Shown here piece after piece: positions 863 through 62,862 of a stretch of 64,000 nt of DNA (the stretch's first letter is position 1; every line of letters starts with the position of its first letter). Below the pieces are notes generated by a model, which saw nothing but the letters and a program-made list of their open reading frames with translations, was not told where the DNA came from and made no database searches. The DNA is from Penicillus capitatus (Eukaryota; Plantae; Chlorophyta). The stretch lies in assembly GCA_965649825.1 (NCBI GenBank), contig OZ287697.1, positions 1,660,351 to 1,724,350 on the forward strand, written 5' to 3'. The translations under genes and the position numbers were made by a program.

Positions 863-2487
863 TCACATGTCTTTAAAGATATTGTTGTAAAATCGAAGGC
901 CGCCTGGTCCGTCGTCTCGACACAGAATCCCTCGCCTCTCTGCCAACAGCAGGTGCTCCTGGGCAATGGTGAGCGGCACACGGAGTGAGGTGGCGATGTC
1001 GATGGGGGATAAGGGACGACTCAAGGCACCGGCCGCCGTTTGCACCATGGCGGCGATTCGATCGCAGACGGCCGTTTCGTCATGAGCCGCCGACTGAATG
1101 ACGCGAACGCCACTCGTAAAGGTCCGCACGGAGAGCGGGATCTTGAGCTTGGGAAAGAGACGGGCCGCTTGAAGCAGGTCGTCCGGCGAAACGAGCTCGG
1201 CGGCGCCTCTGGCTCGGTTGTAGAGGGAGTAGATGTCGAGTAGGGTCATCACGCCGCCCTGCTCTTCCAGACGCGACTCGAGAAAATCGGCGAGCTGGCG
1301 GCAGAGCTGATCGTGATACAGATTCCCGGCAGCTTCTTTCGTCACCGGACTGGTAATGCCCATGCTGATGAGTTCACGGATGGTGTCCTGTTCGGCATCG
1401 GCCTCTTCATCGGAGGCGGTATCCCCGTCGCCGCCGAAACTGGCATAAAACCGATCGGCCAGTTTTACCATCTCCTCCGCTTTGGACATCAACGAATTGA
1501 GATCCTGAAAGGCGTCGTCGAGCGCTCTGCAGAAGCTGGCGTTATATGAGGACGTGTAGAAAGGATGGGGGACTTTGTTGTTTGTTTCTGTTTTTCTTCT
1601 TCGCGTTTGAAGATGTCGCCCAGACCGGATTTGATAATCTTGCGCCGGCCTTCGGTGGTTTCGGTCTCGTTCAGTGGGGCGTCGGCCGAAGTGTCGTGCT
1701 GAAAAGCAATCGCCCAGTCCATCGCTTTTGGCACCGATCGATTCGCCGTTGCCATCAGCGCCCGTATCGCGCGATTCCGTCCGAATCCCATTTCGATCAA
1801 TTGCTGGACGTTGTTGGGATCGACGCCTTTTGGCAGATCTTCTGCGACGGCGGCTGGAGTGGCGGCGCTCTTCCATTTCTCCTCTGCCATTGCCTTTGTC
1901 AAATTCTCGGCGAAGATCGGAGGGATGCCGCTGCGAAACGACAGCCCAATGAACGTCATGCGCGCCGCATCAATGCCGCCTGTCACATCATCACCTCTCG
2001 TCTCACACATCATCCATGCCGTCACATCACGCACCTGGGGCTGGCCTTCGGTCCAGCGTCACGAAAACCTGCAGTTTGACCTTCTGACTCTTCAGATTCA
2101 ATCGAGCGGCGACAGAGGATGCGACTTCCCAGGTATTGACAGCGGCGAGTGGGATCCAGCACGAGCATCCTGGCAGGGGAGCCGTCGCAGCGTCGATCCA
2201 TAACACGCGATGCGACGTCAATACCATACTCCCATTCTACATCTCACTCTATCTCACACATTTCGTCATATGACGCAATACAGCGAGCACTTCATATTTT
2301 TCAGCAGGGGCGGATGGGATGCCTCCTTTGCCGCCGTAAAACTTCAAGTCCACCTAAAAGGATGACGATAGGGTATGACGCGCTAAGACTGCGCCGAACG
2401 CACCGGACTCGCGATACAGCGCTCGACTTCATTGTCTAACAGAACGGCTCGGCCACTCGGACGCAGAGACAGAGCCTCGAGCAACAT
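863..2487 (-). CDS. VPS36: ESCRT-II subunit VPS36 (GLUE domain + inserted UBA domain + EAP30/winged-helix C-terminus), multi-exon
   Basis: Exon 1 from ATG 2487 reads MLLEALSLRPSGRAVLLDNEVER; GLUE exon reads NGSMVLTSHRVLWID; C-terminal exon reads LDDAFQDLNSLMSKAEEMV…MGITSPVTK…LYNRARGAAELVSPDDL. A UBA-like segment VDPNNVQQLIEMGFGRNRAIRAL…AMDW lies at about 1698-1824. Confidence 0.9.
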
Positions 2488-5679: not shown

Positions 5680-7018
5680 ATGCATTCTTTCGCCACACGT
5701 GCGATTTTCGTGACGCCATCGGCTCGCGCCTCGAAGCCGTTTCGTCCCTCGCGTGGCACTTCGCGACACGACCCTCGCAAAAACACCACCAGTTTAACGA
5801 CACGTACCTAACCGACCTCCTTCCACTTCCTCCCTCCCTTCACAGCTACCACAGGAGAGTTGCGACGTCGACATCAGGGGACTTCTGCGTCGCAAGGAGT
5901 GACCGAACTCGAAGAAGGCGGTGGATCGGGTGGAGGCAAAGACGCAGATAAGAAATGGACAGGCGGCGACGGAGAGGACGGTAAGATGGATAAAAGAGTG
6001 AGAGGTGTGACCAATGGTGCCGTCTGGCTTATGTACTAGAGGGTTCTAACCGTAAGATGGATCCCGCCATCACGGCGATCTTGGCCGAAGCGGGACGCTC
6101 CGTCGATTCCTTCCCTGCCGATTTCGCCGCGGCACTGAAGAAGGGAAAAGTGTCGACGACGATTCTGAAGCGGTATATCGCGATGGAGCAGAATTTTCTG
6201 TTGCGTTTGCTCTTTGGCGTGGCGGGATTCCGCGAACGACTGCTCGCCGATCCGGGGTTCCTTTTCAAAGTGTCCGTGGAATGTGGCATCGGTATCTGCA
6301 CCAAAACGGGAGCGGAGTACACCAAAAGGCAGGAGAATTTCTGGAAGGAGCTGGATTTCGTCACGGCGAATGTGATCATGGCCATCTTGGCAGATTTCAT
6401 GCTTGTATGGCTCCCAGCCCCGACGCTCGTCTACAATCGCTCCGTCACCAGCAACGGCGGCTTGCTGCCGTGGTTTCAGAAATGCCCGGACAATGCCTTT
6501 CAGGCAAGACGTCGTGTTTGGTCGTCAAAAGTGTGACCGTGATGTGACAGGTGGTACAGAAAGGCACGCAGCCGTTCTCACTCATGCAGCGTTTTGGATC
6601 TGTCATGCGTAATGGATCGAAGCTCTTTGGCGTGGGCGTCGTGTGCAGTTTCATCGGCGTCGCCAGTACCAACACACTTCTCACTCTTCGATCGAAACTG
6701 GATCCTTCGTTTCATCAGCAGCATCCGCCGCAAGACGTTTGGGCCATGGCTCTTGGATACGGCGCCTATATGGCCTCCTCTTCCAATCTCCGATATCAGA
6801 TCGTCGCTGGCGTCATCGAAGAACGCGGCATCGAAGTGCTCTTCCGTAAACAACGTCAGGTCATCAGCGCCTTGTCTCTTCTCATTCGGACGGGCAATAC
6901 GTTTGTCGGATCGCTCCTCTGGGTCGATTTCTGTCGCCTCACCGGGCTGCAGAAATCGAAACCGCAAGAGGCGGCGCCGCCAGTTGAGACGCCCGTCACA
7001 TCAAAGAAGAAAAGATAA
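5680..7018 (+). CDS. RER: RETICULATA-related plastid envelope protein (DUF3411), multi-exon
   Basis: Transit-peptide-like start MHSFATRAIFVTPSARASKPFRPSR, then a Gly-rich linker GGGSGGGK…GGDGED. Core reads GFRERLLADPGFLFKV…ELDFV…ADFMLVWLPAP and PDNAFQ/VVQKG…SSNLRYQ, all typical of DUF3411. Confidence 0.9.
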
Positions 7019-7052
7019 AAGAGTGAGAAAGGAATGGTTTTTAACAGCGTTT

Positions 7053-7855
7053 TTAGATTTGCGCACCCAATTCTCGCACGTAATTCAAGACCTTCTCCGG
7101 ACGACCCGAACACATGATCTGACCGTCGTCCATGTACGTCACGGTGTCTGCGTATTTGAATTCCTCAAATCTACAACAAGACGGTTAGACATTGGACTTC
7201 TCACTCTTTCTTTAGGACCGACCTATGTGTGACCCAAAGAGCTGTCACATCACGATCGGATGCGACGACATTGCGCACGCTCTGTACGACACGTTCCTGA
7301 TCGGCTTCATCGATGAAGGTCGTCAACTCGTCCAGCAGCAGAAGCTTCGGCTGACTGACTAACGCCCCGGCAATCGCCACGCGTTGCTTCTGACCTGCGA
7401 CTTTGATAGGGCACGCATCCGTCACATCACAGGAGATGACCTCCGGAGAGTGTACTGATCGGAGCGTCGTAGTAATCGATCATATCGACCGATCGCAGCG
7501 CCGAGGCGACGAGATCGCGAACGTCGCTCTCATCGCGTTGACGTCCTCCGAGTGCGAAAGCGACGTCCGCCGCCACCGTGGGCATGATGACTTGGTGATC
7601 GGGATTCTGCAGAACGAATCCGATCGGCGAGACGCTCCGCACGACGCCGCTTTCTGGGCGATGCAATCCGGCGAGCAATTTCAGAAGCGTCGATTTGCCG
7701 CAGCCGTTGGGCCCGGCGAGAAAATGGAGCTGGCGCGGATAGAGATCCATATGAATACGTTTCAACGCGGGCTTCGCCGTACGACCCCGACGAAAGGAAA
7801 GCGAGACGTTGCGAAGCGAGACAGCTGGTCCATCACTGTGCGTCAAAGAATTCAT
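7053..7855 (-). CDS. ABCI10: ABC transporter I-family ATPase (ABCI10/NAP13, EcfA/CbiO-like), 3 exons
   Basis: Walker A GPNGCGKST, Q-loop FVLQNPDHQVIMPTVAADVAF, signature LSGG|QKQRVAIAGAL, Walker B LLLLDELTTFID and H-loop LWVTHR. The last exon ends …ELGAQI* with TAA at 7053-7055. Confidence 0.85.
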
Positions 7856-7864
7856 GAAGTGCCG

Positions 7865-10484
7865 TCAGCGAAACAGCGCCGTGCAAATCTTGCGCGCGCG
7901 TTGGAGTCCAATGCGACGACTTCTGCCGATGATGCGAGTGTCGGCGAGCGTCTGCGTCAAGATCTTCGTTCCGACTTCGGCGTGTTTTCGATAGAGGGAC
8001 TGCGGCGTGGGGAAGTACTTGCAGATAGCGAGGGCGGTATCCGGTCCGATACCTTCAGAATCGCTAACCGTCGTGGTATGGAGGGCACTGGACATGCGCC
8101 TACCTGGAATGCGTGTCAGCATCAGGCCCCATACTTTACGGTGTGTTAGCTGATGTAGACCGACGAGATGCTTTTCTAGAACGCTCATACGCTGGGCGGC
8201 GGTGCCGAGTGCACTGGAGGAACAGAGCGAGTGATGGAGTAAAGTGTGAGATCACACTTTCGCACTTGGCGTATGGATTGTCGAGGCGTTGCTTAAGCGC
8301 GGCAGTGAGATTCGCATAGAACTGCAGCGTCTCTCGGTAGTTCTTCGTCCGGACGACCCGGAATCCATCCAACGCCTCTGTCGCCACCGTTGCCGTGCGT
8401 ACGGCTTGGCCTACGGGACGATGCTCGGCGACCGAGGGTTGGTCACACGGAAGACGTCTTACTGCGTTCGACGGTGCTCGGATCGCCTTCGACTAGGTAG
8501 ACGATGTTGGCGATGCGACATCTTCGCAGCCAGTACTTCTGCTGCTCGTAACGTCGATCGATGATGGACGCCGCCAGATCGTCGACGCGTTTTCGCTCCA
8601 CGATCCAATCCAGAACGTACTCTTCGCCTCTGAAAAGACGTGCAGTACTTAAGGCACGAGAGCGAAGCGTGCGGGTCATGACCCATCGGGAAAGGACGGT
8701 CTCTTGCGGGCGATCCACAGCGCATCGCCGAGCGGAAGCTGTCGAACAGTGACGGTGACGCCGAGATCTCGCAGCAGCGTCATATGCGATTCCAGAGAAT
8801 CTGCGCCACAAAGGCATTGGACGGATTCTGACGGAAGGCACCGGACGTGGTCGTCGTGTACGATCGTTCTGCCCTTGTTGTCTGGCGAACTGTTCCCGGT
8901 GATCGATTACGAGAATGAGCTACAGCACCGTCCATGATTTTGCCGTTTCTACGATCTTGGGCACCCACCTCAAATTCGTCATCGAAATTGGCACACGGAT
9001 CGGTGTAGGGTAGCACCGCCACCGTCGTCTCGCGGATAGCCACGTGCTCATGATGAAAGATCTTCCTAAGCAACAAACGCTCGATCTGGCTGAGCCTATC
9101 GCCAAAGAGACGACCGAATACGCTCCGTGGCCGCTGGATCGACGGTTTCTGCCACCTGGTCGAAATCGACCGAGGTGCCTCCGACAAGGGAACCGGATGG
9201 CGGTATGGTCTGAGGCTCCTCCGCTGCTTCTTTAGGTTTCATCCGCCCGCTCTCAAGCGCGTGTTCCCGTAGACGCTTCGCCAGTTCAATGCCACTGGGA
9301 GTCAGCGTGACCTTCTTCGGCCGGCCAAAGATCTCGACCAGTGGCGGCGTCTGCCTGAGCAATGTCTGCATAGGTCACACATACATCACACATCTCGGTC
9401 GATATCGATGGCCGTCTGTACTGTCGTGCAGCTCCATGCGGTATAGGAGAGCATCTGCTGCGAAACGACGTCGAACTCTTTGCGCCGCCGGGTGACGAGC
9501 GAATCGTTGCCGTAGACGCAGGAATCGCACAGGCCACTCTTTTCCGTCCGAGCCATCAGTTCGTGCTTGGAAATAAACTTCTCGTCGTTTTCCGCCGCCT
9601 AGACGCCGCCAAGAGTGACATCGATGACCGACCGATCGATGGCCAACCTCGAGGAGGACGATCAGAAAGGCATAGTTCGAGGTGCCTGGCGGCGGGACGT
9701 ACTCCTTCTTGGACTTCGCCTTACGTGACGGCTTTCTTTCGCTGCCCGCCCTCGGCTCCTTCGCTGCTCCAGTGGCGGCTGCGTTCGGCTCTTGCTCCTC
9801 CTGATCGCGGCAGCAGACTAAGTCACACATTCAGTGGCGATCCCGTCACCTGCGGAGGCATCTCCGGCGGATGCAGTCTCCACAGATGCTCCACGACGAT
9901 CTTGTTCAGAAACAGGCCAATTCGGATGAGGCGTCGTGCGCAGTGGCGTGTACTTTGCTCAAGAATGGGCCGATGTTTCTGAGGCGGTGTAGATGATCGA
10001 TCGTGAGAACGGGTTCCTTTGCGTTGATGATAGATCTCAGTGCTTTGGAGTAGACATTGTGAGCGCGACCAGTGTTTCCCTGTTGCTCTGTGAGCAGCCT
10101 AGGGTAGGGCAGAGATGGAGGGGTGACGGATAGGAATGGAGTATCAGACCAGAAGAAGACCGCGAGAAGACGGTTGGCGTCGCAGCTCACGTGAAGGCGT
10201 TTCCATTTCTTGTCGCCGGAGGTGAGGGCAGTGAAAGCGTCTTCTGCGAGACGGTCGCTCATCGGAAGGATTTGGTGCGGCCAGATAGATGTCTGCAAGT
10301 GAACGTACAAACAGACCTGACGGTTAAACGCAGGTTGCGTCGCATGTCGCGTCAGAGTACTGAGGTGTTCAGCGCGATCTTGAGTAAGTGGCGGCGCAGA
10401 CCGTTTTCTTTTTCGATAGCTTCGAATCCCTACTCCCTGGTTATTTTCTGAAACGTTGATAACGTCTGGCAGTCGCAGACGCAT
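7865..10484 (-). CDS. MUS81: Crossover-junction endonuclease MUS81, multi-exon; exact start uncertain
   Basis: N-terminal HhH region (YSKALRSI…LRNIGPFLSK), winged-helix region (EYVPPPGTSNYAFLIVL; LTPSGIELAKRL), ERCC4 nuclease motif IVERKRVDDLAASIIDRRYEQQKYWL…YLVEGD and C-terminal tandem HhH (LTRIP|GIGPDTALAI…FPTPQSL…RRIG). Confidence 0.9.
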
Positions 10485-40836: not shown

Positions 40837-43800
40837 ATGCGACGCGACTACGACTCATTACGGAGGAGTCCGGTGCACACGGCGCTGTGCTTCCTGTTGC
40901 TTGCTCAAGGGTTGGAGGCGTCGTCTCTCGCCGCCGCGAAGTCAGGTAGCTATTTTCATTAACCTCCCGTCAGCTTCCGTCTTGGGCGCAGCTTCGCCCT
41001 TAAACGAAGAACGTGCGCGAGACGTGCTGCTGTTTAGGGAATGCCTTGGTGGACATCCGCCCCCAGCGAAACGAGCGTTTCGAAGAACAGCACTTCAAAG
41101 TGCGACATTCGCCTTCGATCCATCTCACTCTAACTTCCCATCTCTTCGCCAGAACCCACCGCCCCAGAGGAAACTGCACCAGCTGTTGGACTTCTTCGGC
41201 GGAGATTTCGGTACGGCAGCAGAAGAAGTTTCGCCGGCGTGAGGTGTGTCGTCTGCAGAGTGCGATCTGTCGGAAAGAGTGATCGACCGTGCGTTGGATG
41301 GCGGTTCGAGAACGTGGCGCATCGACGATGAGCTTTGGGAAGACATCGACGAAGATCTGCAGGAGATCGTGAACTGCTCCGAGGAGGGAGACACTCTTCT
41401 CTTCGACGTCTCCGACACACTTCGGCCTTCTGGCCAGATCACTCTTCCTTGGTCACTCACACTGACTGCCGACACTCCGGACACCGACCTCGTCGAGGGC
41501 GTCTTCCCAGAGACTCGACGGAAGACGACGTTCACGTGTCAGCCCGATGTCCAAAGCCTGTTCCTCGTGAGGTAAGCGGCATTCCTTATGGCCGACCGAT
41601 TCCGATGATGTCTCGGAGTTCAGGTCTCCGGACGTACTGTTTGCGAATCTCGCCTTCGCGGAATGCGCCCTGAACGCTGACGAGTCGACCGCCATCATCG
41701 ACGTCGGGGCATGCGACGACGACGACCGCGGCACCATCAAGCTGCATCACGTGGTGTTCCGTCGGAATCATCTCGACGGCACCGTCGCCGTGCTCCTGAA
41801 CGAGGGGTCATGCTCCTCAGTCGAGATGGTCGACGTCCTCTTCGAGGGCAACACATGCTCTGGACGCTGCGCCGCCGTGCTCTCGAACCAGAACGAACTG
41901 ACGAACGTTCGGATCCGTGACAACAGGCAGATCGATGCGCCTGGCGTTCCGGCCATCCTCTACGCCCCTCCAGAATCCAGCACGACGCTTCGAAGCATCG
42001 TAGCATCGGAGAACGACGGTCCCATTGTGCACGTGCATCGCGGAGAGGTGCAGATGAGGGACTCGATCTTCCGTCGGAACAGAGAGATCGACAACACAGA
42101 AGGCGAAGCGCACGGTGCCGGCGTCTACCTCACTGGCGGCGAAGCCGACATCCGCCGATGCAGCTTCGAAGACGGCAATGCGCTGCTGGGTGCAGGTCTC
42201 TTCGCCGACCGGTCCAGCATCTCCCTCCGAGATTCGAACTTCGAACGGAACAGAGGATCGGTCGGCGGGACAGCCGTTCACCTCTTCCGCTGCCTCACCG
42301 TCGACGTCCGAAACTGCACATTCTCCGAGAACCTCGTTCCAGCGCTCGCCGGAGCAGGCATCCTCTCGAACGCCACAGATACGTTGAAGATCCGACAAAG
42401 CACTTTCGTTCAGAACACTGCTGACGATGGGGGAGCAATTTGCATCGTGGGCGGCGGCGAAGTGGAAGTGGTCGATTCCGAATTCGAGAGGAATGGCGCA
42501 GACATCAGTGGTGGTGCGATTTACGTGGAAGAGACAACGTTGTCGATCGAGAGAACCGTCTTCCGCAGCAACACGGCATCGAGTAACGGAGGAGCTGTCG
42601 ACATCCGCGACTCCTCTCCAGCCGCTTTTCGAAATCTGACATGTCAATTCAACTCGGCAGCCGTCGGTGGCTGTCTCCATCTCCGGAAGACTTCGATTGC
42701 GATGAACGACTCCCTCATTCAGGAAAATTTGGCAACAGAAGACGGCGGAGGGATTTCGGTGGCGTCGACCAACTTTGCGAATATCGCTAGATGTCGTTTC
42801 CTCGGCAACAACGCTACAGGCCATGGCGGTGGTGGCAAGTTCGGCAAAGTCGATCTGCAGATCGAAGACACGGTTGTTTCTCGCAACCAAGCGACATCTG
42901 GGGCAGGTTTTCTTTTGCAAGAAGGAGAGATCACCATTGTCGACTGCACATTCGAGGCTAATGCTGCCGAGAGCTACGGAGGTGGCATGACTTGCGGAAC
43001 AGACGGTCGTCTCACTGTCCGAAGATCCACATTTCGACAGAACAGAGCCGAGAAAGGAGGTGGAGGCAGCAGTGTGATTGCAAACTGTTTGGCGAGCTTC
43101 GCCAATGTGACATGGACATTGAACAAGGCAGCCACAGAGTGTGGAGGAGGCGCCCTCGTCGAAGGAGCATACGCAGCATTTCGGGACTCCATTTTCCAAG
43201 GGAACACTGGACAGAGAGGCGGGGGTAGTTGTATGAGAGGCTCCTCTGCTCAGTTCATCCGCGTTGTCTTCCGTGTCAATTCTGCTGTAACCTCAACCGG
43301 AGGACTCCTTGCCGAAAACAGCACTGCAAGCGTCAGTGACTGTCAGTTCGAGGCCAACTCTGCAGATGTTGCCGGCGGCGTGTCTGCCAGAGAGACGTCT
43401 CGAGTGACATTAGATCAATCCCGTGTCATTCGGAACATCGCCAGAAATCAAGGCGGAGGACTGAGCATAAATGAATTTTCCGATCTGCTGGTAACCAATT
43501 CGATCATCGCTTCGAACTCGGCCACAGGATCAGGAGGTTGTGTGTTTGTACATAATGCAACCGTGACGTTTGTCAACGTCACGACATCTCTGTGCTCAAC
43601 GGATGGTGCTGGAGGCGGTATTTTGATCATTGAAGCGCGTGTTAATTTCACAGATTCGAGATTCAGTTATTCGAAAGCTTTTTTTGGCGGCGGGATCTCG
43701 GTGCACTCTGGCATCCTCTACTTGACGAACTCTGTCGTGAATGCATGCAAAACTAACTTCTCAGGAGGCGCTCTTGCTTTGAGCGAATCCGCCGCAACGA

Positions 43801-46800
43801 TTCAATCCACTAATTTTTCGAACAACTTCGCAGAAAATGGAGGAGGCATCCAGCTGATAACATCTCGCTTGTTATCCAATAATGTGACATTCTTCAAGAA
43901 TACTGCTGGTAACTTTGGCGGCGGACTTGTGGCAGGAGAAGCAAGTTCTTTCCGATTGACGAATGTCTCTTTGATTCAAAATACCTCGCCATATGGCGGA
44001 GGCGTGGTCTTGATGCAAAATTCTGATGGGTACATGGACGAGTGTTTTGCGCATAGCAACTCCGCCCTTATACACGGAGGGATGGCCAACGTAGACAACA
44101 GCAAACTGACAGTTCAGGGAGGAACATTTCTGGAAAACGAAGCGACTGGTGGGGCAACGTTTGTCGTAGTCGATGGCCGACTGAGCCTTGATGGTGTTGA
44201 TGTCATCAACGGATCCAGCACCCACTGGGGTGGCGGCCTGTATGCAATAGCTGGCAGTTTTGTGACGATTTCCCGTTCCAGTTTCGTCTCCAATCGTGCC
44301 GAGTTTGGAGGAGCAATAAATCTGCGCGAGTCTTATCTCTGGGCTGACGAAGTGCGCTTTGTCAGATGCCGGGCGTCCATTGACGGGGGAGCGATCCATG
44401 CCAACGTCTCATCGTCCATGCTGTGCACGAACTGTGCGTTCGATAACAACTTCGCCGTCGGAAAGGGAGGTGCTGTCAACATTGAATCAGAAAAGACGCA
44501 GCTCCTCGCCTATCAGTGCGACAACTGCACCTTCTCGGACAATCGCGCGGTTCTCGGAGGTAATCGATCAGCCCTCATCTCTTCCGTCGTCGTTACTGTG
44601 TTCAACAGGGGCCATTCATCTGGTAACGGCAGACGGGGCGAAGGACTGCACGGCACACAACGCCAACTGCACCTTCCTCGCTCTGCGAAGCGCACATTTC
44701 ACTGGAAACCAAGCATCATCGGCAGGCGGCGCCATTCTCTCGAGCGATCTCAATGCCATCCGTGTCCGCTGCTCCAACAGATCGCGCCCTTATTCTCATC
44801 GCTACGTGACGAGGAAGGAATTCGAATCTCTGGGCATCCTCAACTCCTTTGACCGCATCTGCGCCAAGTGGAAGGGAAACGAAGCGGACGTTTATGGGGA
44901 TACTCTGGCCTCTTACGCTCGCCGTGTCAAAAAAGTGATCCGTTATGAAGATCGGGATTTCGAAGAGGAAGTCAAAGGCAATCGATACTTTGTGCGAAAC
45001 CATGTCAGTGGAACGCAGATCCCCAGTCTATACGTCGAGGCGGTGGATGCTCTGGGACAGGGACCCGCCAGCGGCGCCGGAAATGCCACGGTTTTGGCGA
45101 CCATGGTATCTCCCGAAAAACTCTTCTCTGGATCCATCGGCGTGCGACTGGACGAAGGGGTAGGGAACTTCTCAGGAGTGGCCGGATACCGCGAAGCTGG
45201 ATTCTATAACGTCCGCGTGAACTTCAGTGAGGAGAGCATTCCGCCCTTCACCATTGTCGTCGAGATCCGAGGATGTTTGATCGGCGAGGTCGTGGCGGCC
45301 AACGGGACCATCTGTCAGCCTTGCAACGGCAACAACTACAACTTCTTCCCAGATCGTGCCGATCCAGGATGCCAGTCGTGCCCAGACAACGCCGACTGTG
45401 ACACGGCCGTCATTCTCCCGGATGCTGGGTACTGGCATCGAACTCCATGCTCAGACCACATACAGGAGTGTCTGACCAAAGACGCCTGTGACGAAAAGAA
45501 CAGAACGAAAGATCTCCGCGAACATGCAGCGATCGTCGAGAATTGCCAGTTTTCCGAGCCCTTTATTCTGAGCTATGCCGACGTCCAATGTCGCGAGGTA
45601 CGTATCCCGCATCATCCATGGAGTCCTGATGGTTATATGACGCCTCTGTTGCTCGATAGGGTTACAGAGGTCCTCTGTGTGGTTCTTGCGAGGCTTCTTA
45701 TGGGCGCATACAATCCTTACGTTGTGGACCCTGTGGTTTTCGGTTCGTCAGTTTCATTCTGGTGCTCTTCATCATCATCGCTCTTCTCGTCCACAGCGCC
45801 ATAACTATCACAGGCAGTCTTCCTCAAAAGAAGACGCTCGTCAGAGATATGAATCAACACCAAGGGACTTCATCAACTCTGCCAATAGAATCCATGTCCC
45901 CTCCACGTGCTCCTGGAGAGAAACGAGAGTCGCCCAATGCAGTCCCTCATGCTCGTAAAATGCAATCCGTCGAGATGCCGCGTAGGAGGCACGATCCTTC
46001 CGAGAGCCTCGGGTTGTCTAGGCTTCAACCAACTCCACCACCAACAACTCCACCGCAAGCTTCGGCGCCAGAAGAGCCCGAGCAGCCGAAAAAAGACACC
46101 GTGCAGCTTGCCAAATGGAATGGCACCGAAATTATCAAGGTAACAATACCACTCTCACTCTTCTCGTTCATTTTGTCTCGTCTAGATAGCGAACAACTAT
46201 TTTCAAGTGATTGAGATTGCTATGTCGATCAATGTGAATTGGACAACGGCACTCACCGGCGTCTTTAAAGCAGCCCGTAAGATCTCAACGTATTCTCATT
46301 TGCGTCTGATGCACGATGGAATTGTCATTGCAGAGTTCTTGAGCGCTACGGTGTCGGAAGCAGTGGCCGGTTCCGTAGAATGTCTCATCCCAGAGAATTT
46401 TGCCATTCCTCGATCGGCTATGCCCACCGTGTTCAACATCATGGTGCCGATGCTGGTGTCAAGCTTGTATTATATTTTCTGGTTCATCGTCTTCCAATAC
46501 ACCAAGGAGACCATCAGCTTTTTGGCCAAGCGCTGCATCCTCAGCTTCATGGTAGTGTCCTACCTCTCCTACATCACCATCACCGAGACCGCCATCAACG
46601 TCCTGTCCTGCATCGATGTCTACGATTCACTGGAGCTCGGTTCGAATGCGACGCATGCCTACTGGGCAGTGGACACATCTCTGCGATGCTATGAAGGTTC
46701 CCATGCCGTGCTTGTTGCCCTCATTGGATGGCCCGTCCTCGTCTTCTTCTCTTTCGGTTTTCCCGCTGGCCTCGCTGCACTGCTGGTGCTCGAGAGAAAG

Positions 46801-57148: not shown

Positions 57149-60100
57149 TTATGTACCAAAAGAGTGAGAGGGATGTTTGTCACACTTGAGAAATCCTAGA
57201 AAGCCAATGACACGCTTAAGGTCAGAGCGCAACCAGATTCTATAGACTCTCAAGGTTCCGGCGTCCGAATCAGAGAGTGTTCCTTTATCCCTGAGGACGA
57301 CCTTCAAGTATTCGGCAGCATAGACCAAAAGAAAGGAACCAAGAACAACAAACGTGATGACGTTGATCAAACCGCACAAGAGTGAGATGGTCAGTCGGGC
57401 CCAGTCGTTGACGAAACTGTCACTTTTCAACATCGAAGCAAGAAGTGTGGTCAAGAGTGACACGAAAAGTGAGAATGCGTCGATCCTGTTCAGTGCATCA
57501 AACCTCTTTCTGTAGGGCGATGCCACGATCTGCACTCCGATGGCCAGGGAGAAGAAGAGCGCCGCTCCGATAACGGGTAATGGATTGTCGAAGCGATGGG
57601 CGCAGAAGACCAGAAAAGCGATCCCGGCCTTCCTTGCTACGATAACAACCTCCCAGTACCGACGCTTCCCATGCCGGTAGCTCCGATAAAGGAACCCCAT
57701 GGACTGGTAGATCCAGCCATCGGTATCGTTCAGCCGCTCTTCCGAGGACCCAAGGATGGCGATGAAGGCGATCAGCAGCCCGCCATAGACGATGCCGACG
57801 AACGACAGGATGAGGATGGCCAGCATTAAGTGATCCCCTTCGAAGCACTTCAAACTGGTATCAACGGCCCAGTAGCTTATCTCTTTCTCTCCGTCTGTCG
57901 CATCCAGGACGTTGTGGGCGTTGACGCACAGGACGGTGCTGAGTGCTGTCTTGATGACTGGCACAGAAGTGATGTACCAGAGGACCATGATGGTCAGGAG
58001 CATTCTCTTGGCAAGGTAACGGAACGGTTTTTCGACACCGCAACGAATAGCTGCCGCTATCCAGAAGAGTGCGAGCAGCAGCAAGACGAAGGCCGGAACA
58101 ATACAGACACTCACGATGGACGCCCACACTGTCTTATGCAAACGTGCGTCTTCGCTGGCCAAGCAGATCGCAGAATGCTGAATACTGTCTATGGCGAGTC
58201 CACCGAAGAACTCTGTATCGAACGACAGAGACTTGGATCAGAAACGATGCGACACAAGCATGTGTACCTGCGGTTTCTGCCATGATGAGGACAGAAATCT
58301 CCCATCCAACGTCCAGAGAGGCGAGAAGCACCGTCAAGCTCAGGAAGTTCAGTGTGATCTGCCAAACAGTTTGTCAGGATCAAGCGCTCGGCAGAGTGTC
58401 GCACCTTGAACATCTCCACTGTCTTCCACAGTGCCAGCGTTTTTTCTGTGGCAGGTAGCCCTTCTGCCTGTTCGTTTTTTGCAGAGTCGTCTCGCCTGTC
58501 CACAGGGGAACGTGCTTTCCGTCTCCTGCTCTTTCTGTTCGATGAAGCGACGGGAGACATTTCGATGCAGTGGGCGGTACTGTCCTTGCTGGAGAGCGTG
58601 GTCTGTTTCTCCTTTGCCACAGTCAAGTTCCCTCTGATCGTTACGCACGACAATGCCGCAAGAACCAACACCGAAACACAAATCACTGCCACATCGCCGA
58701 CAACGGGTCGACACTTCCTGCACCTGGAGGAGAGGGAGCTACCGTACGAGCTCACACACGATCCGCACAATGGGCCACAGTGTCCCTGGAGAAAACAAGC
58801 CCTTGTCAACCACATCCCAGATGATCATACAGATCTCTCACTCTAGTGCACTGCACCTCTTGGTACTCTTTGATCAACCCATGGCTCACATCGCAGTTCT
58901 CGATGTCCCCTGTCACGTTCCTCAGTTTTTCGGAACGCCCTTTGAAGTTGCAGGCATGGGAAGTGAGACATCGCTTGATGTGCACGGAACAGGGGGTAGC
59001 TAGCCAGTAGCCATCTTCCGGTAGGATCGCACTCGTCTCGCAGTCGCCGTTCTCGGGACAGGGACGACACTTGCCTGCTTTCGGATCGAAATTGTACATG
59101 GAGCTGCTGCACGGTGTGCAGAGCTTTATTTCCCCCACTGCCATTTCGCCAATCGTACAGTTTCGCACCACCACAGTCATCGTCAGTTCTCTGATGGCCT
59201 TTTCACTGAACGCAACTGTCATGTTATAGACATCTGGAGGTCCAAAGCCGACCATCGGAGGGAAGGTGATGTTGCCTTGCGGCATTCGCACAGAGATATT
59301 GCTGACCCCGAATGTATCTGGGGTGGAGAGCTTGGCAACAACCACCCGATGACCAATCGCAGGTGTCTGTTGGAGTGAATCGATCAACATCACGTTGAGC
59401 GTTGGCAATAGACTGCCGCCAAGGTAGTTCTCCAATACGTGCACTTCGCCACTCGCAATCTCTGCTCTCTTGTCCTTAGAATCGATGGCCATTCTCGCTT
59501 TGACGGCGAAGGATGCAACAGTCCGTCCGTAAAGCCCAGCCTGATTGCCTTTCCATGTTGCACAGAAATCGCGTTCGGATGCAAGGATGCGTGCCTGACT
59601 CAAGTCCGTTTCTTGGAGGAGTGTAACATCATCGTTCTCCAGAACGGGTGTGCAGCTGACTCGGATGGCCTCCAAACGGTCCACAAAAATCGCTCCTCCA
59701 GCAGATTTTGCAGAGTTTCCCTCGAAACGAGTGTCCGTGATCACTGCAAAGGAACATCTTTCGGCGTCATTCGGGCAATCTTCACCATTGAAACCACTCT
59801 GCCAGTAAAGTCCACCTAACAGGGCAGACTCAGTTAGTTGACTGCCTGGTTCTCTGGTAAAACACACCTCCTTTACGTGCTGTGTTGCGTGCCATCACAT
59901 TTCCTTGCAGCAGGAGAGCGAGTTTCTGCTTCCCATTGGACCTGAAGGCGATGCCACCGCCCTCTGTCATTGCTTCGTTTTCTCTGAAGCGGCAGTCGAT
60001 GCACTGGACGGTCGATCGCTTTGCTTTGATGCCTCCTCCCATCTTCGCTTCGCAGCGGAACACATCCAAACCCTTTGCTTCGAATGTTGTGTCGTTCAAA

Positions 60101-62862
60101 GCGATCGCTCCTCCATTGACAGCCCTTCCGCTTGTCATGGAAACGTTCTCCACGATCAGTGAACCATTTTGACTGACAACGATGAATCCGCCATGACGAA
60201 GAGCAAATCCATTGCTGAAGTGTGATTCTTGAATCTTCGCTGTCGCGTTACCAATAAATAAAGAACCACCGCTTTTATTAACGAAATTGCCTTTGAAAAT
60301 CACACGTGTCAAGCTTACCACGGAGCCGGATGCTATGTCTACTGCTCCTCCGAATAAAGCATTGTTGTTCTCAAACATCGAATCGTGAATAGTAAGATGA
60401 GACTCCCAATCGACAGAGACTCCTCCACCATACTCGCCAGCTTCATTTTTCGCCATTACGAGGCCCATCGCAGTGACATGGGATTTCAACAGACAGATAC
60501 CACCACCGGTGCCATCCACACGGCTTGATAGAACACTGGAATTGACCATCTTTGCAGACGCGTACAAGAGATCAGCTGCTCCGCCGTTGCCAAGACTCGA
60601 GCAATTGTGAAGAGTGGTCGATTCCAGCAGAAGATGCGCGTTCCTGAAGGCCAAACACCCACCATCATCCTTGACATGTCCATTGTCGAGTGTCGAGTAG
60701 TGCATGCGGACAAACGAATCTTCCACTGAGTGCACGAATCCTCCCTCCTCAGATGCTTCTCCATTTTTGAATGTGCATGATGTGAAGGACACAGCTGAAC
60801 CGGAAATGAAAACAGAACCACCGTAGGATTCTGCAGTGTTGTTGACAAAGGTGACGTGTGCAAAGCTTCCTGCCGCATCGACCCATCCACATCCGTTTGC
60901 TTCGTTCTTTTCTTCAAGGACTGGAACGGTGCATTTCTTGTTTCGGTGTCGATCTTGAACAAAAAGGCAATCCTGGACGACCAAAGCGCTACCGTTGGTG
61001 GCTGAGTTGTTGTCAAATTTGCAGTTGGCAATGGAAAAGACGGAGTGCTGTATCCACACAGCACCACCTCGGACAGCTGAATTCTTGATAAACGTGCTAT
61101 TGGCAATGAAAAGATCTGAGGCTTCGGTAAACACAGCGCCTCGTTCACCGCTCTTTTGTCGATTGTTGTTGTTCTTCAAGGCGGAATGTGATACTCTCAA
61201 TGACGAGGACCTGCCCACGTGCAGACAGCCACCAGTTAAACCAGCGTTGTTCTGGATACAGGTCAAGCGTCGTATACTGAGTTCGGATTTCTTTGCATCG
61301 ATTGCCCCTCCAGACTTTACGGCCCAATTGGAAAAGAAGAGAGAGGAGTGGAGAGTCAAGAAACTTCCATTCCGTAGAAGCACGGTCCCTTTAATCTTGG
61401 CCGCGTTGCTCCGGAACGTGCACTCCTTCAGAGTGATGTTCGATGCCTGTGCATTGATCGCTGCGCCGTAACTTGCTTTGTTTTCTTCAAAAGTGGAGTC
61501 TTGAATCAGGGCAGATGCGTCTTCGAGCTTGATGCAGGCGCTGGCGAAACGGTCTTTCACGACAGTTTCCGAATTCTTTGTGAAACTGCCGTTCGACAAA
61601 CGGAGAGAAGCTCCTTCTATCTCGAAGATCGGACAACTGTTGGCGAAAGCTCTGATCCGATCGACGGTTGCTGCGGATCGAGGAGGAGCTCGAACAATCA
61701 CGGATCCAGAGTTCGAAGACAGAATTGGTTCATTCTGTTCGATGGTGACGTTCCGAATCGTGTTTTCTTTGGCCAGAAGAAGACCGCAGACCCCGTTGCA
61801 GAAGTTTCCTCGGAAGTCGAAATCGTGTACCTCCACCGCTGAGCACGACGTGGCGTCTGCCTTGATGGCGGCGGCGCCATTGAGTCGATTGTCCCTGAAT
61901 TCGATGCGATGCAATCGAATGGTTCCTCTTGCGCGATCCGCGGTGCACTCCTCGACATCGACGATGGATTTTGCTGTGCCAGAAACGTCGTACAGGCATC
62001 CTTCGATGACAAAGTCTGTCAAGGTCACGTCGACGGCCCTACGTGTGAACGGTGCTGACATCGGTGCGACCGATGGAGCCAGCGCTTACCGAAATGTAAA
62101 CAGTCCCTCGTTCTTCTGAGGACAGGTGAGCACGGTTCGCTTGTCAGAGATAGAAACGTTGACGTCGTCGTGCTCCCCTCGCCGGACGTAGCCGTTCATC
62201 GTCAGTGGCCATGGAATAACGGTGCGCGAGGGAGGCCGGATCGTCTTCGTTATGTCGAGCAGCAGCAGCACGTCTCCTGGCCGAGAACAGTTGACGACGA
62301 GCTGAAGGTCGTTCTCTATGTCGTTGAGAACTTCCGAGTTCAATAACCACTCTCCAGAAGCGGCGTTCCGGTAACGGCGACGCTGCTCCGCTGACAGATG
62401 ACAGGCGACATCTGCGCAACGAAGATGGAACGTTTCAGTCGAGTCAGGAGGGCGCAGATCGAATGACGTTACCTGCCGTTTCCAGAGTCGTGAAAGATTC
62501 TTGGAGCAACGTACGATGACGCTCCCGTACCTACGCAAAAAATAAGCAGCTGTTATTACACCATTTCAGTCAACGGATGGCAGAACTCACGAAGTGTGTC
62601 AGCGTTTCGGTCTGGACTGCAGTGTCCAGTGGTAGAAGTTGGTCAGAACCTGTCCCATCTTCTGCGATAACACGAACAAAGAGTTTTGCTACAGGAAAAG
62701 TGTCTTCTTGCCAGAGAGCGACGCTGTCTGTGTCAACTGCAGCTGCGTCGACTCAGGGACGCCCAAGTCATCCGCGAGTACGCAGAGGATGATACTCATC
62801 ACTGACAGGCCGCAGAAGACAAGAGCACGTTTCTGACATAAGGGTGAAGAGAAAACCGCCAT
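57149..62862 (-). CDS. Receptor-like paralogue D (divergent); first exon(s) uncertain
   Basis: ORFs 62086..62538, 59830..62061, 58806..59867, 58189..58815 and 57149..58162 give the same domain order, with YWAVDTSLKCFEGDH and YWEVVIVARK. Signal-like start MAVFSSPLCQKRALVFCGLSVM at 62862. Confidence 0.75.

What the first reader, a model, noticed from the sequence alone, without database searches (positions are those of the whole stretch)
7853..7867. MUS81 stop is followed 9 nt later, in frame, by the ABCI10 ATG (TGA-CGG-CAC-TTC-ATG)
Seen: on the minus strand MUS81 ends …CTG TTT CGC TGA (7867-7865), then CGG CAC TTC, then the ABCI10 ATG (7855) in the same frame. There is no room for a poly(A) signal plus promoter, and this ABCI10 start shows no obvious transit peptide. 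Established: UGA followed by CGG is a known leaky-stop context in RNA viruses, and green algae have bicistronic mRNAs. Inference: either a bicistronic MUS81-ABCI10 mRNA (reinitiation) or programmed readthrough giving a nuclease-ABC ATPase fusion.
Basis: partly seen in the sequence, partly recalled or inferred. Interest (0 to 1): 0.7.

Follow-up and report, generated by a model that had tools for sequence, protein, structure and literature searches.

The report
MUS81 and ABCI10 genes nine bases apart
In this siphonous green alga (a relative of Caulerpa and Bryopsis) two intact, unrelated genes, the DNA-repair nuclease MUS81 and the plastid-type ABC ATPase ABCI10, lie only 9 bases apart on one strand, but a sister species shows the shared reading frame is chance, so this is tight gene packing and not a fusion protein made by reading through the stop codon.

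Summary
The letters are exactly as reported. On the minus strand, MUS81 ends at TGA 7867-7865, followed by CGGCACTTC and then the ABCI10 ATG at 7855-7853, in frame.

**Both genes are real and complete.**
- MUS81 has 13 exons and 586 aa. Its C-terminal domain profile ends 5 residues before the TGA.
- ABCI10 has 3 exons and 234 aa.

**A related species separates the two readings.** Loci L001 and L002 share 86.7% DNA identity with the window and hold the same intact gene pair.
- The spacer there is 11 nt, not 9, so the ATG is out of frame.
- The stop context is UGA-GAC, not UGA-CGG.
- An in-frame TGA follows after four codons.
- The spacer is the least conserved stretch of the locus (4 of 9 bases).
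- No RNA structure follows the stop.

Programmed readthrough is therefore not supported.

**Other readings tested.**
- The 'cacag' acceptor proposed at 7836 is not conserved, so an upstream transit-peptide exon is not supported either.
- Leaky scanning, the known green-algal bicistron mechanism, is excluded. MUS81 carries 20 ATG triplets against 21.6 expected.

**What remains.**
- ABCI10 may have its own transcription start inside the MUS81 3' end. I favour this, because the last two MUS81 introns are unusually conserved.
- Alternatively, a bicistronic mRNA may be translated by termination-reinitiation.

Only transcript data can decide between these two.

The parts
7865..10262 (-). MUS81 gene. 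The CDS has 13 exons: 10262-10150, 10098-9954, 9900-9850, 9800-9648, 9598-9422, 9365-9115, 9065-8969, 8919-8862, 8800-8683, 8629-8463, 8410-8256, 8191-8104 and 8052-7865. The 12 introns are GT-AG and 49-64 nt long. The protein is 586 aa.
   Evidence: The model was built. Pfam finds HHH_8, MUS81 winged helix, ERCC4 and EME1/MUS81_C. The same 12 introns and an intact 587-aa ORF are present in L001. pN/pS is 0.070/0.328.
7865..7867 (-). MUS81 stop codon TGA, the natural C-terminus of the protein.
   Evidence: Seen. The C-terminal domain profile is complete 5 residues before it. The C-terminus ...ARKICTALFR* is identical in L001.
7856..7864 (-). Inter-ORF spacer CGGCACTTC, 9 nt. It is non-coding and unconstrained.
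   Evidence: The relative has 11 nt here (GACTACCCTCT). Identity is 44%, with a 2-nt indel.
7053..7855 (-). ABCI10 gene. The CDS has 3 exons: 7855-7441, 7394-7223 and 7170-7053. The introns are 46 and 52 nt. The protein is 234 aa. The start ATG is at 7855-7853 and the stop TAA at 7055-7053.
   Evidence: L001 has an intact 234-aa orthologue with dN/dS 0.09. The N-terminus aligns with Caulerpa, Bryopsis and Ostreobium.
8192..8255 (-). MUS81 intron 11, unusually conserved (57 of 64 bases, no gaps). It may be part of an embedded ABCI10 promoter or leader region. That role is an inference.
8053..8103 (-). MUS81 intron 12, unusually conserved (44 of 50 bases, one gap). Its role is inferred as for intron 11. 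The 1-nt indel in L001 shows it is a true intron.
7019..7052 (.). 34-nt spacer between the convergent stop codons of ABCI10 (-) and the RETICULATA-like gene (+). It is almost invariant between the two species and contains TGTTAA on the minus strand.
6057..7018 (+). Neighbouring RETICULATA-like gene, convergent with ABCI10. It is listed only as context.
   Evidence: PF11891, two halves.

Best explanation
MUS81 and ABCI10 are two separate, intact genes, and each makes its own protein. In one lineage of bryopsidalean green algae they have come to lie head to tail with almost no intergenic DNA: 9 nt here and 11 nt in a sister species.

The shared reading frame and the UGA-CGG context in this window are coincidences of this species. 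They are not a programmed readthrough signal. ABCI10 translation starts at the ATG at 7855, and no upstream exon is spliced on.

The whole 5' leader of the ABCI10 mRNA must therefore consist of MUS81 3' sequence. I think ABCI10 is most likely transcribed from its own start site inside the last roughly 200-450 nt of MUS81. MUS81 transcripts would in turn run into or through ABCI10 before they are polyadenylated. These would be overlapping transcription units of the kind seen in compact eukaryotic genomes.

**Shown:** both gene models, their integrity and selection, the non-conserved frame and spacer, and the absence of ATG depletion, RNA structure and a conserved acceptor.

**Inferred:** the position of the transcription start and the overlap of the transcripts.
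For: **The genes**
- Both are complete and under purifying selection in two species.

**The spacer**
- It is 9 nt in the window and 11 nt in the relative, with 44% identity. Flanking exons are about 90-92% identical.
- No Rfam element matches the region.

**No upstream exon**
- No AG acceptor is conserved between the stop codon and the ABC core.
- ABCI10 N-termini are equally short in Caulerpa, Bryopsis and Ostreobium.

**A possible embedded regulatory region**
- The two MUS81 introns nearest ABCI10 are 88.6% identical, against 78.7% for the other 12 introns. Fisher p = 0.015 for substitutions and 0.0003 with gap columns. This fits regulatory sequence 200-400 nt upstream of the ABCI10 ATG.
- The last exon and the spacer hold no ATG in either species, about 197 nt in each.

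**Transcript overlap elsewhere in this genome**
- Convergent stop codons lie 34 and 49 nt apart.
- Transcripts that start in upstream genes or end in downstream genes are documented in compact eukaryotic genomes (PMC3629993, citing Williams et al. 2005).
Against: - No transcript data exist for this organism or its relative in the collections searched, so the transcription start is not observed.
- The intron-conservation signal rests on 114 aligned bases.
- Synonymous divergence in the last MUS81 exon is not significantly lower than elsewhere (pS 0.235 against 0.340).
- Other 5' intergenic regions nearby are 500-700 nt, so a promoter buried in coding DNA would be an exception in this genome.
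- In chlorophyte algae, colinear ORFs spaced this closely are typically co-transcribed (PMC7896298, PMC11291117).
- No recognisable poly(A) signal for MUS81 was found downstream of its stop.
Confidence: 0.5

Rival explanations
1. One MUS81-ABCI10 bicistronic mRNA is made. After terminating at the MUS81 UGA, some 40S subunits stay on the mRNA and reinitiate at the ABCI10 AUG 9-11 nt downstream (termination-reinitiation).
For: - The stop-to-start distance is very short in both species, 9 and 11 nt, and the ABCI10 AUG is the first AUG after the stop.
- The junction is less structured than shuffled sequence (z = +0.9 to +1.3).
- No room is left for a conventional promoter.
- Polycistronic nuclear mRNAs are widespread in green algae (PMC7896298).
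- Synthetic Chlamydomonas constructs with a 6-10 bp spacer after a sizeable first ORF do express the second ORF (work described in PMC11291117).
- No poly(A)-like motif was seen between the MUS81 stop and the end of ABCI10.
Against: - Reinitiation efficiency falls steeply with the length of the first ORF. MUS81 is 586 codons long.
- No UGGGA (TURBS motif 1) lies on the minus strand anywhere within the MUS81 gene. The identity of that motif is from my own knowledge.
- The experimental green-algal evidence points to leaky scanning, not reinitiation.
- A housekeeping plastid ATPase would be tied to the low, repair-linked expression of MUS81.
- The conserved last introns of MUS81 are not explained.
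- The pairing is absent from Bryopsis-like genomes.
Confidence: 0.3
2. Programmed UGA readthrough produces a functional MUS81-X-RHF-ABCI10 fusion protein.
For: In this window the ORFs are in frame and the stop context is UGA-CGG. That is the type II readthrough context of several RNA viruses (PMC3159437). UGA followed by C is a generally leaky context, so trace readthrough on any transcript spanning both ORFs cannot be excluded.
Against: - In the sister species the spacer is 11 nt, so the frame is shifted.
- The context there is UGA-GAC, and an in-frame TGA follows four codons later.
- Spacer identity is 44%, with a 2-nt indel.
- No stem-loop lies 3' of the stop.
- MUS81 is domain-complete at the stop.
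- No ERCC4 plus ABC_tran architecture was found: none of the 34 distinct MUS81 homologues (36 hits over the two searches) carries ABC_tran, and none of the 10 long ABCI10-like representatives checked, out of the best 150, has ERCC4.
Confidence: 0.03
3. ABCI10 has a further upstream exon, for example one encoding a transit peptide. That exon would be spliced to an acceptor near 7836, so the ATG at 7855 would not be the real start.
For: - ABCI10 is a chloroplast protein in land plants, and only 10 residues precede the ABC core here.
- A pyrimidine-rich 'ttctttgacgcacag' is present in the window.
Against: - That AG is absent in L001 and L002 ('ctgatgcaacg').
- No AG between the MUS81 stop and the conserved core is shared by the two species.
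- In the ABCI10 frame, the MUS81 TGA lies 4 codons upstream of the ATG.
- The orthologues from Caulerpa (233 aa), Bryopsis (239 aa) and Ostreobium (259 aa), and a 906-nt contig encoding 261 aa, have similarly short N-termini.
- In Bryopsis the gene has an ordinary 420-nt divergent upstream region.
Confidence: 0.03
4. A bicistronic mRNA is translated by leaky scanning, as in the described green-algal polycistronic loci.
For: The short inter-ORF spacer resembles those loci. Their median spacer is 40 nt in Auxenochlorella and 183 nt in Chlamydomonas.
Against: - The first ORF is 1761 nt, against medians of 291-357 nt in those loci.
- It holds 20 ATG triplets, against 21.6 expected from base composition. 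Seven of them are in-frame internal ATGs (eight in-frame counting the start codon).
- A scanning 40S subunit could not reach the ABCI10 AUG.
Confidence: 0.01

Closest known systems
Polycistronic (bicistronic) nuclear loci of green algae (Gallaher et al. 2021, PMC7896298; leaky-scanning study, PMC11291117)
   Same: - Two unrelated ORFs lie on one strand of a chlorophyte nuclear genome, each with its own start and stop codon.
- They are separated by a very short spacer.
- Frame is irrelevant: about one third of the known loci are in frame by chance.
- The pair is conserved in a related species.
   Different: - The first ORF here is long (1761 nt, 13 exons) and not ATG-depleted, so the demonstrated mechanism cannot work.
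- Co-transcription is not shown.
- The pair is absent from Bryopsis.
Overlapping transcription units in compact eukaryotic genomes (microsporidia and nucleomorphs; Williams et al. 2005, cited in PMC3629993)
   Same: - The intergenic DNA is too short to hold UTRs and a promoter, so transcripts must start in or run into neighbouring genes.
- Convergent neighbours here are only 34-49 nt apart.
   Different: This genome is only locally compact. Other 5' intergenic regions are 500-700 nt, and the window holds gene-poor stretches several kb long. No transcript maps are available.
Type II stop-codon readthrough signals (UGA-CGG or UGA-CUA) of alphaviruses, tobraviruses, furoviruses and coltiviruses (PMC3159437)
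   Same: UGA followed by CGG, with a downstream ORF in frame, in this one species.
   Different: - No 3' stem-loop is present.
- The extended motif is not met.
- Neither the context nor the frame is conserved in the sister species.
- The sequence between the ORFs is not under coding constraint.
Termination-reinitiation (TURBS-type) of caliciviruses and influenza B, and synthetic stop-6-10 nt-start constructs in Chlamydomonas (described in PMC11291117)
   Same: The stop and start codons lie within about 10 nt, and the junction is unstructured.
   Different: - No UGGGA motif lies upstream.
- The first ORF is cellular and long.
- There is no evidence that both ORFs share one mRNA.

Membership tests
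Green-algal polycistronic loci (leaky-scanning type) | One mature mRNA spans both ORFs, with a single transcription start and a single poly(A) site. | not testable with these tools
   The protein collections hold no transcript-derived sequence of this species or of L001/L002. One search found only the genomic exon-1 ORF P0005.
Green-algal polycistronic loci (leaky-scanning type) | The inter-ORF spacer is short, from tens to a few hundred nt, and sometimes the ORFs overlap. | tested here: met
   The spacer is 9 nt in the window and 11 nt in L001/L002. Published medians are 40-183 nt.
Green-algal polycistronic loci (leaky-scanning type) | The first ORF is short and start codons are depleted upstream of the second ORF. 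| tested here: not met
   The MUS81 CDS is 1761 nt and holds 20 ATG triplets, against 21.6 expected.
Green-algal polycistronic loci (leaky-scanning type) | The gene pair is conserved across species. | tested here: inconclusive
   The pair is conserved in one related species, represented by L001 and L002. It is absent from Bryopsis and three Bryopsis-like contigs. Caulerpa could not be checked.
Programmed stop-codon readthrough (type II, UGA-CGG) | The leaky stop context is conserved among relatives. | tested here: not met
   The context is UGA-CGG in the window and UGA-GAC in L001/L002.
Programmed stop-codon readthrough (type II, UGA-CGG) | The downstream ORF is in frame, and the extension is under coding constraint. 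| tested here: not met
   The spacer is 9 nt against 11 nt, with 44% identity. An in-frame TGA follows four codons after the stop in the relative.
Programmed stop-codon readthrough (type II, UGA-CGG) | A stimulatory stem-loop begins about 8 nt 3' of the stop. | tested here: not met
   Fold z-scores are +0.90 for the window and +1.13 for L001, both less stable than shuffled sequence.
Termination-reinitiation (TURBS type) | The restart AUG overlaps the stop or lies within a few nt of it. | tested here: met
   The distance is 9 and 11 nt, and the ABCI10 AUG is the first AUG after the stop.
Termination-reinitiation (TURBS type) | An upstream motif complementary to 18S rRNA (UGGGA) lies within about 100 nt of the stop. 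| tested here: not met
   No TGGGA lies on the minus strand between 6416 and 11451. The identity of the motif is from my own knowledge.
Overlapping transcription units of compact genomes | The intergenic distance is shorter than the UTRs and promoter that must fit there. | tested here: met
   The tandem gap is 9 nt. Convergent stop-to-stop gaps are 34 and 49 nt.
Overlapping transcription units of compact genomes | Mapped transcripts start inside the upstream gene or end inside the downstream gene. | not testable with these tools
   No RNA data are available. The only indirect hint is that the last two MUS81 introns are unusually conserved.
MUS81 crossover-junction endonuclease | The domain order is HhH, winged helix, ERCC4 nuclease with the ERK motif, then a C-terminal HhH2 (EME1/MUS81_C). 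| tested here: met
   Pfam finds HHH_8 at 40-92, the winged helix at 145-245, ERCC4 at 334-478 (1.7e-26) and EME1-MUS81_C at 515-581. The motif 'IVERKRVDDL' is present.
ABCI10 (NAP13, EcfA-like soluble ABC ATPase of plastids) | It is a single ABC ATPase domain whose best matches are to plant and algal ABCI10. | tested here: met
   ABC_tran matches at 2e-26. Walker A (GPNGCGKS), the signature (LSGGQKQR) and the H-loop (VTHR) are present. The top hits are ulvophyte and land-plant ABCI10.
ABCI10 (NAP13, EcfA-like soluble ABC ATPase of plastids) | It carries an N-terminal chloroplast transit peptide. | tested here: inconclusive
   Only 10 residues precede the core. Other Bryopsidales models are similarly short, at 12-21 residues, against 34-60 elsewhere. 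No targeting predictor was available.

The most novel reading that the evidence does not exclude
MUS81 and ABCI10 are expressed from one bicistronic mRNA. The second cistron would be translated by termination-reinitiation after a 586-codon first ORF, across a 9-11 nt spacer. That would be a natural green-algal polycistron working by a mechanism different from the leaky scanning shown for Chlamydomonas and Auxenochlorella. It would also tie a plastid transporter ATPase to a DNA-repair nuclease.
Probability: 0.3. Interest if true: 0.6.

Novelty: new member of a known kind. Interest (0 to 1): 0.3.

Why it matters
**If ABCI10 is transcribed from inside MUS81.** The locus is one more case of overlapping transcription units. 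It shows that bryopsidalean nuclear genomes tolerate promoters inside coding DNA. Gene-model pipelines for these algae should know this, because such pairs are easily fused or truncated.

**If the pair is bicistronic.** It would be a natural test case for reinitiation after a long ORF in green algae. It could also offer a compact spacer for two-gene expression constructs.

**In both cases.** The comparison shows that an in-frame stop-to-ATG junction with a 'leaky' UGA-CGG context can arise by chance. Such a junction should not be read as programmed readthrough without conservation of frame.

Tried and rejected
- **Fewest-introns path through MUS81.** It gave an open but wrong model. I replaced it with a model curated by homology and conservation and checked that model against L001.
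- **Codon-usage log-odds gene finder for the whole window.** Antisense frames scored as well as true ones, so I used it only to pick ORFs for Pfam. A full census of intergenic distances was not achieved.
- **UBA ORF next to an EAP30 ORF at 863-2227 (-).** It looked like a second tight tandem pair. On reading, it is one VPS36-like gene with a 47-nt intron.
- **Metagenome scan for further relatives of ABCI10.** It returned only distant homologues, at most 56% identical. None has MUS81 nearby.
- **Search for Caulerpa MUS81.** A third protein search, with a MUS81 profile, aimed to find the Caulerpa gene and test adjacency through gene numbering. It did not retrieve it.
- **Search for poly(A) signals.** I looked for TGTAA, TGTTAA and AATAAA downstream of seven stop codons. 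No consistent motif emerged, so MUS81 3'-end formation could not be placed.
- **Synonymous-site constraint in the last MUS81 exon.** pS was 0.235 against 0.340, which is within the spread of the other bins.
- **Rfam scan of 6900-8600.** No match.
- **Exhaustive HMMER search with ABCI10 exon 1 for nuclease-ABC fusions.** The long hits are bacterial EcfA-EcfA-EcfT fusions. None has ERCC4.
Full report
**Observation**

On the minus strand the window reads ...CTG TTT CGC TGA CGG CAC TTC ATG AAT..., with the TGA at 7867-7865 and the ATG at 7855-7853.

**The two genes**

The region is eukaryotic, with very short GT-AG introns.

*ABCI10*
- Exons are 7855-7441, 7394-7223 and 7170-7053. Introns are 46 and 52 nt.
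- The 234-aa protein has Walker A, the LSGGQKQR signature and the VTHR H-loop.
- Pfam gives ABC_tran at 2e-26.
- Its best relatives are ABCI10 proteins of Viridiplantae. The closest named ones are Caulerpa lentillifera (64%), Bryopsis sp. KO-2023 (59%) and Ostreobium quekettii (58%).
- The window therefore comes from a bryopsidalean, or closely allied, ulvophyte.

*MUS81*
- I built a 13-exon model, 10262-7865, with 12 introns of 49-64 nt and a 586-aa product.
- It has the full MUS81 architecture: HHH_8, MUS81 winged helix, ERCC4 (profile 1-140 of 140, 1.7e-26) and EME1/MUS81_C (profile 1-74 of 74, residues 515-581 of 586).
- The protein is therefore domain-complete 5 residues before the TGA. 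The stop is its natural end.

**A related species**

Exon 1 of ABCI10 hit a 92%-identical ORF (P0005) on two long contigs of an ENA metagenome assembly, 4.08 Mb and 0.5 Mb.
- These loci, L001 and L002, are 96.9% identical to each other. L001 is 86.7% identical to the window over 10.7 kb.
- Gene order is the same: ABC1 kinase, RETICULATA-like, ABCI10, MUS81.
- L001 encodes an intact 587-aa MUS81 with the same 12 intron positions and the identical C-terminus ...ARKICTALFR*.
- It also encodes an intact 234-aa ABCI10.
- Selection is purifying on both. For MUS81, pN/pS is 0.070/0.328. For ABCI10, dN/dS is 0.09.
- In the alignment, exons carry no frame-breaking gaps, while introns are 71-89% identical and carry indels. 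One apparent 4-column gap in exon 4 was an alignment artefact.
- Both genes are thus functional, and the adjacency is real, old enough to predate a speciation, and not an assembly error.

**The junction in the relative**

In L001 and L002 the junction is ...CTC TTT CGC TGA gactaccctct ATG AAT....
- The spacer is 11 nt, so the ATG is out of frame with MUS81.
- The base after the stop is G, giving UGA-GAC.
- Reading on in the MUS81 frame meets TGA after four codons (GAC TAC CCT CTA TGA).
- Only 4 of the 9 window spacer bases are matched, and there is a 2-nt indel. The flanking exons are 90% and 92% identical.
- The spacer is therefore the least constrained stretch of the locus, and neither frame nor stop context is conserved.

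**Readthrough**

UGA-CGG is the type II readthrough context of alphaviruses, tobraviruses, furoviruses and coltiviruses (PMC3159437).
- The same paper shows that these sites normally carry an extended stem-loop starting about 8 nt downstream. [quoted passage not shown]
- Here the sequence is CGC-UGA-CGG-CAC-UUC, which does not fit that motif.
- The 108 nt from the stop onward fold no better than shuffles: z = +0.90 in the window and +1.13 in L001.
- Rfam finds nothing in 6900-8600.
- None of the 15 and 21 MUS81 homologues retrieved carries an ABC domain.
- In an exhaustive HMMER search of 1.84 billion representatives with ABCI10 exon 1, the long hits are EcfA-EcfA-EcfT fusions without ERCC4.
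- Programmed readthrough is therefore not supported. At most, incidental low-level readthrough could occur in this one species if a transcript spans both ORFs.

**An upstream exon**

- The acceptor proposed at about 7836 (ttctttgacgcacag) is not conserved. The relative has ctgatgcaacg at that place.
- No AG dinucleotide between the MUS81 stop and the first conserved strand of the ABC domain is shared by the two species.
- In the window, the ABCI10 frame is closed by the MUS81 TGA 4 codons upstream of the ATG.
- The short N-terminus is a feature of the lineage. Before the conserved core there are 10 residues here, 12 in Caulerpa, 16 in Bryopsis and about 21 in Ostreobium. Acetabularia, chlorophyceans and a land plant have 34-60.
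- In Bryopsis the gene has an ordinary 420-nt divergent upstream region and no MUS81 neighbour.
- Three further Bryopsis-like contigs also lack MUS81 beside ABCI10.
- The ATG at 7855 is therefore the start, and the juxtaposition is specific to this lineage.

**How is ABCI10 expressed?**

The ABCI10 mRNA leader must consist of MUS81 sequence. Two models remain.

*(a) Own transcription start inside the MUS81 3' end (overlapping transcription units)*
- The two MUS81 introns closest to ABCI10 (8255-8192 and 8103-8053) are 101 of 114 bases identical, with one gap column. The other 12 introns of the two genes are 478 of 607 identical, with 55 gap columns. Fisher p = 0.015 for substitutions and 0.0003 with gaps.
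- The last MUS81 exon plus the spacer, about 197 nt, holds no ATG in either species.
- This genome clearly lets transcripts overlap neighbours. The convergent stops of ABCI10 and RETICULATA-like are 34 nt apart, and those of EcKL and VPS36 are 49 nt apart.
- Precedents exist in compact eukaryotic genomes (PMC3629993).
- Against it, synonymous divergence in the last exon is not significantly reduced, and other 5' intergenic regions nearby are 500-700 nt.

*(b) A bicistronic mRNA*
- Green algae have hundreds of such loci (PMC7896298).
- The mechanism demonstrated for them, leaky scanning, needs a short, ATG-poor first ORF with a median of 291-357 nt (PMC11291117).
- The MUS81 CDS is 1761 nt with 20 ATG triplets against 21.6 expected. 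Leaky scanning is therefore excluded.
- What is left is termination-reinitiation. The 9-11 nt distance and the unstructured junction fit it. So do the synthetic Chlamydomonas constructs with 6-10 bp spacers.
- It is disfavoured by the 586-codon first ORF and by the absence of a UGGGA motif anywhere in MUS81.

I rate (a) at about 0.5 and (b) at about 0.3. Only transcript and ribosome data can decide between them.

**Verdict**

The exciting reading, a readthrough fusion, is not supported. What is there is a lineage-specific, unusually tight tandem pair of two ordinary, separately translated genes. It is of modest interest, mainly as a candidate for an atypical long-first-ORF bicistron or for a promoter embedded in coding sequence.

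Noticed in passing
window 7019-7052 (between the ABCI10 stop at 7053-7055 and the RETICULATA-like stop at 7016-7018); also 814-862: Convergent genes end only 34 nt and 49 nt apart. The 34-nt spacer is almost invariant between the window and L001 (one mismatch) and contains TGTTAA. It may be a shared, bidirectional 3'-end signal. This contrasts with the poorly conserved 9-nt MUS81-ABCI10 spacer.
   Followed up: partly
window 8192-8255 and 8053-8103 (-): The last two MUS81 introns are much more conserved against L001 (88.6%, one gap column) than the other 12 introns of MUS81 and ABCI10 (78.7%, 55 gap columns). Fisher p is 0.015 for substitutions and 0.0003 with gaps.
   Followed up: partly
window 863-2227 (-): A VPS36-like ESCRT-II gene carries a UBA domain between the GLUE/PH-like N-terminal exon and the EAP30 domain. 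A prokaryote-style gene caller split it into two abutting ORFs in L001 and L002. It is one gene with a 47-nt intron.
   Followed up: partly
window 7825-7855 (-), and proteins P0001-P0004, P0007, P0018: ABCI10 orthologues of Bryopsidales have very short N-terminal extensions, 10-21 residues before the ABC core. Acetabularia, chlorophyceans and land plants have 34-60. How these proteins reach the plastid, or whether they do, is unclear.
   Followed up: partly
window 7053-10262 (-): All 14 introns of the two genes are 46-64 nt long with GT-AG ends. The 5' splice sites are weakly conserved (GTCATC, GTCGGT, GTAGGC, GTACAC and others).
   Followed up: no
window 41595-44603 (+), 59848-62037 (-); L002 2547-4274: Very long ORFs carry Chlam_PMP (polymorphic membrane protein) repeats and are flanked by further long ORFs with no Pfam match. 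They are probably large secreted or surface proteins.
   Followed up: no
window above 10596, against L001 below 7237: Synteny with the relative breaks just upstream of the MUS81 promoter. Only a 1.1-kb stretch (window 15979-14880, L001 2046-3151, 79% identity) matches further on. This indicates a rearrangement or indel next to the gene pair.
   Followed up: no
whole window: G+C varies from 46% to 61% in 2-kb bins. Apparently gene-poor, lower-G+C stretches lie at about 17.8-24.5 kb and 47.4-51.1 kb. The genome is therefore only locally compact.
   Followed up: no
L003 8001-10197, L004, L085, L086: In Bryopsis and three Bryopsis-like Logan contigs, ABCI10 is followed by a convergent thioredoxin gene. 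That neighbourhood differs from the one in the window, so the locus has been rearranged within Bryopsidales.
   Followed up: partly
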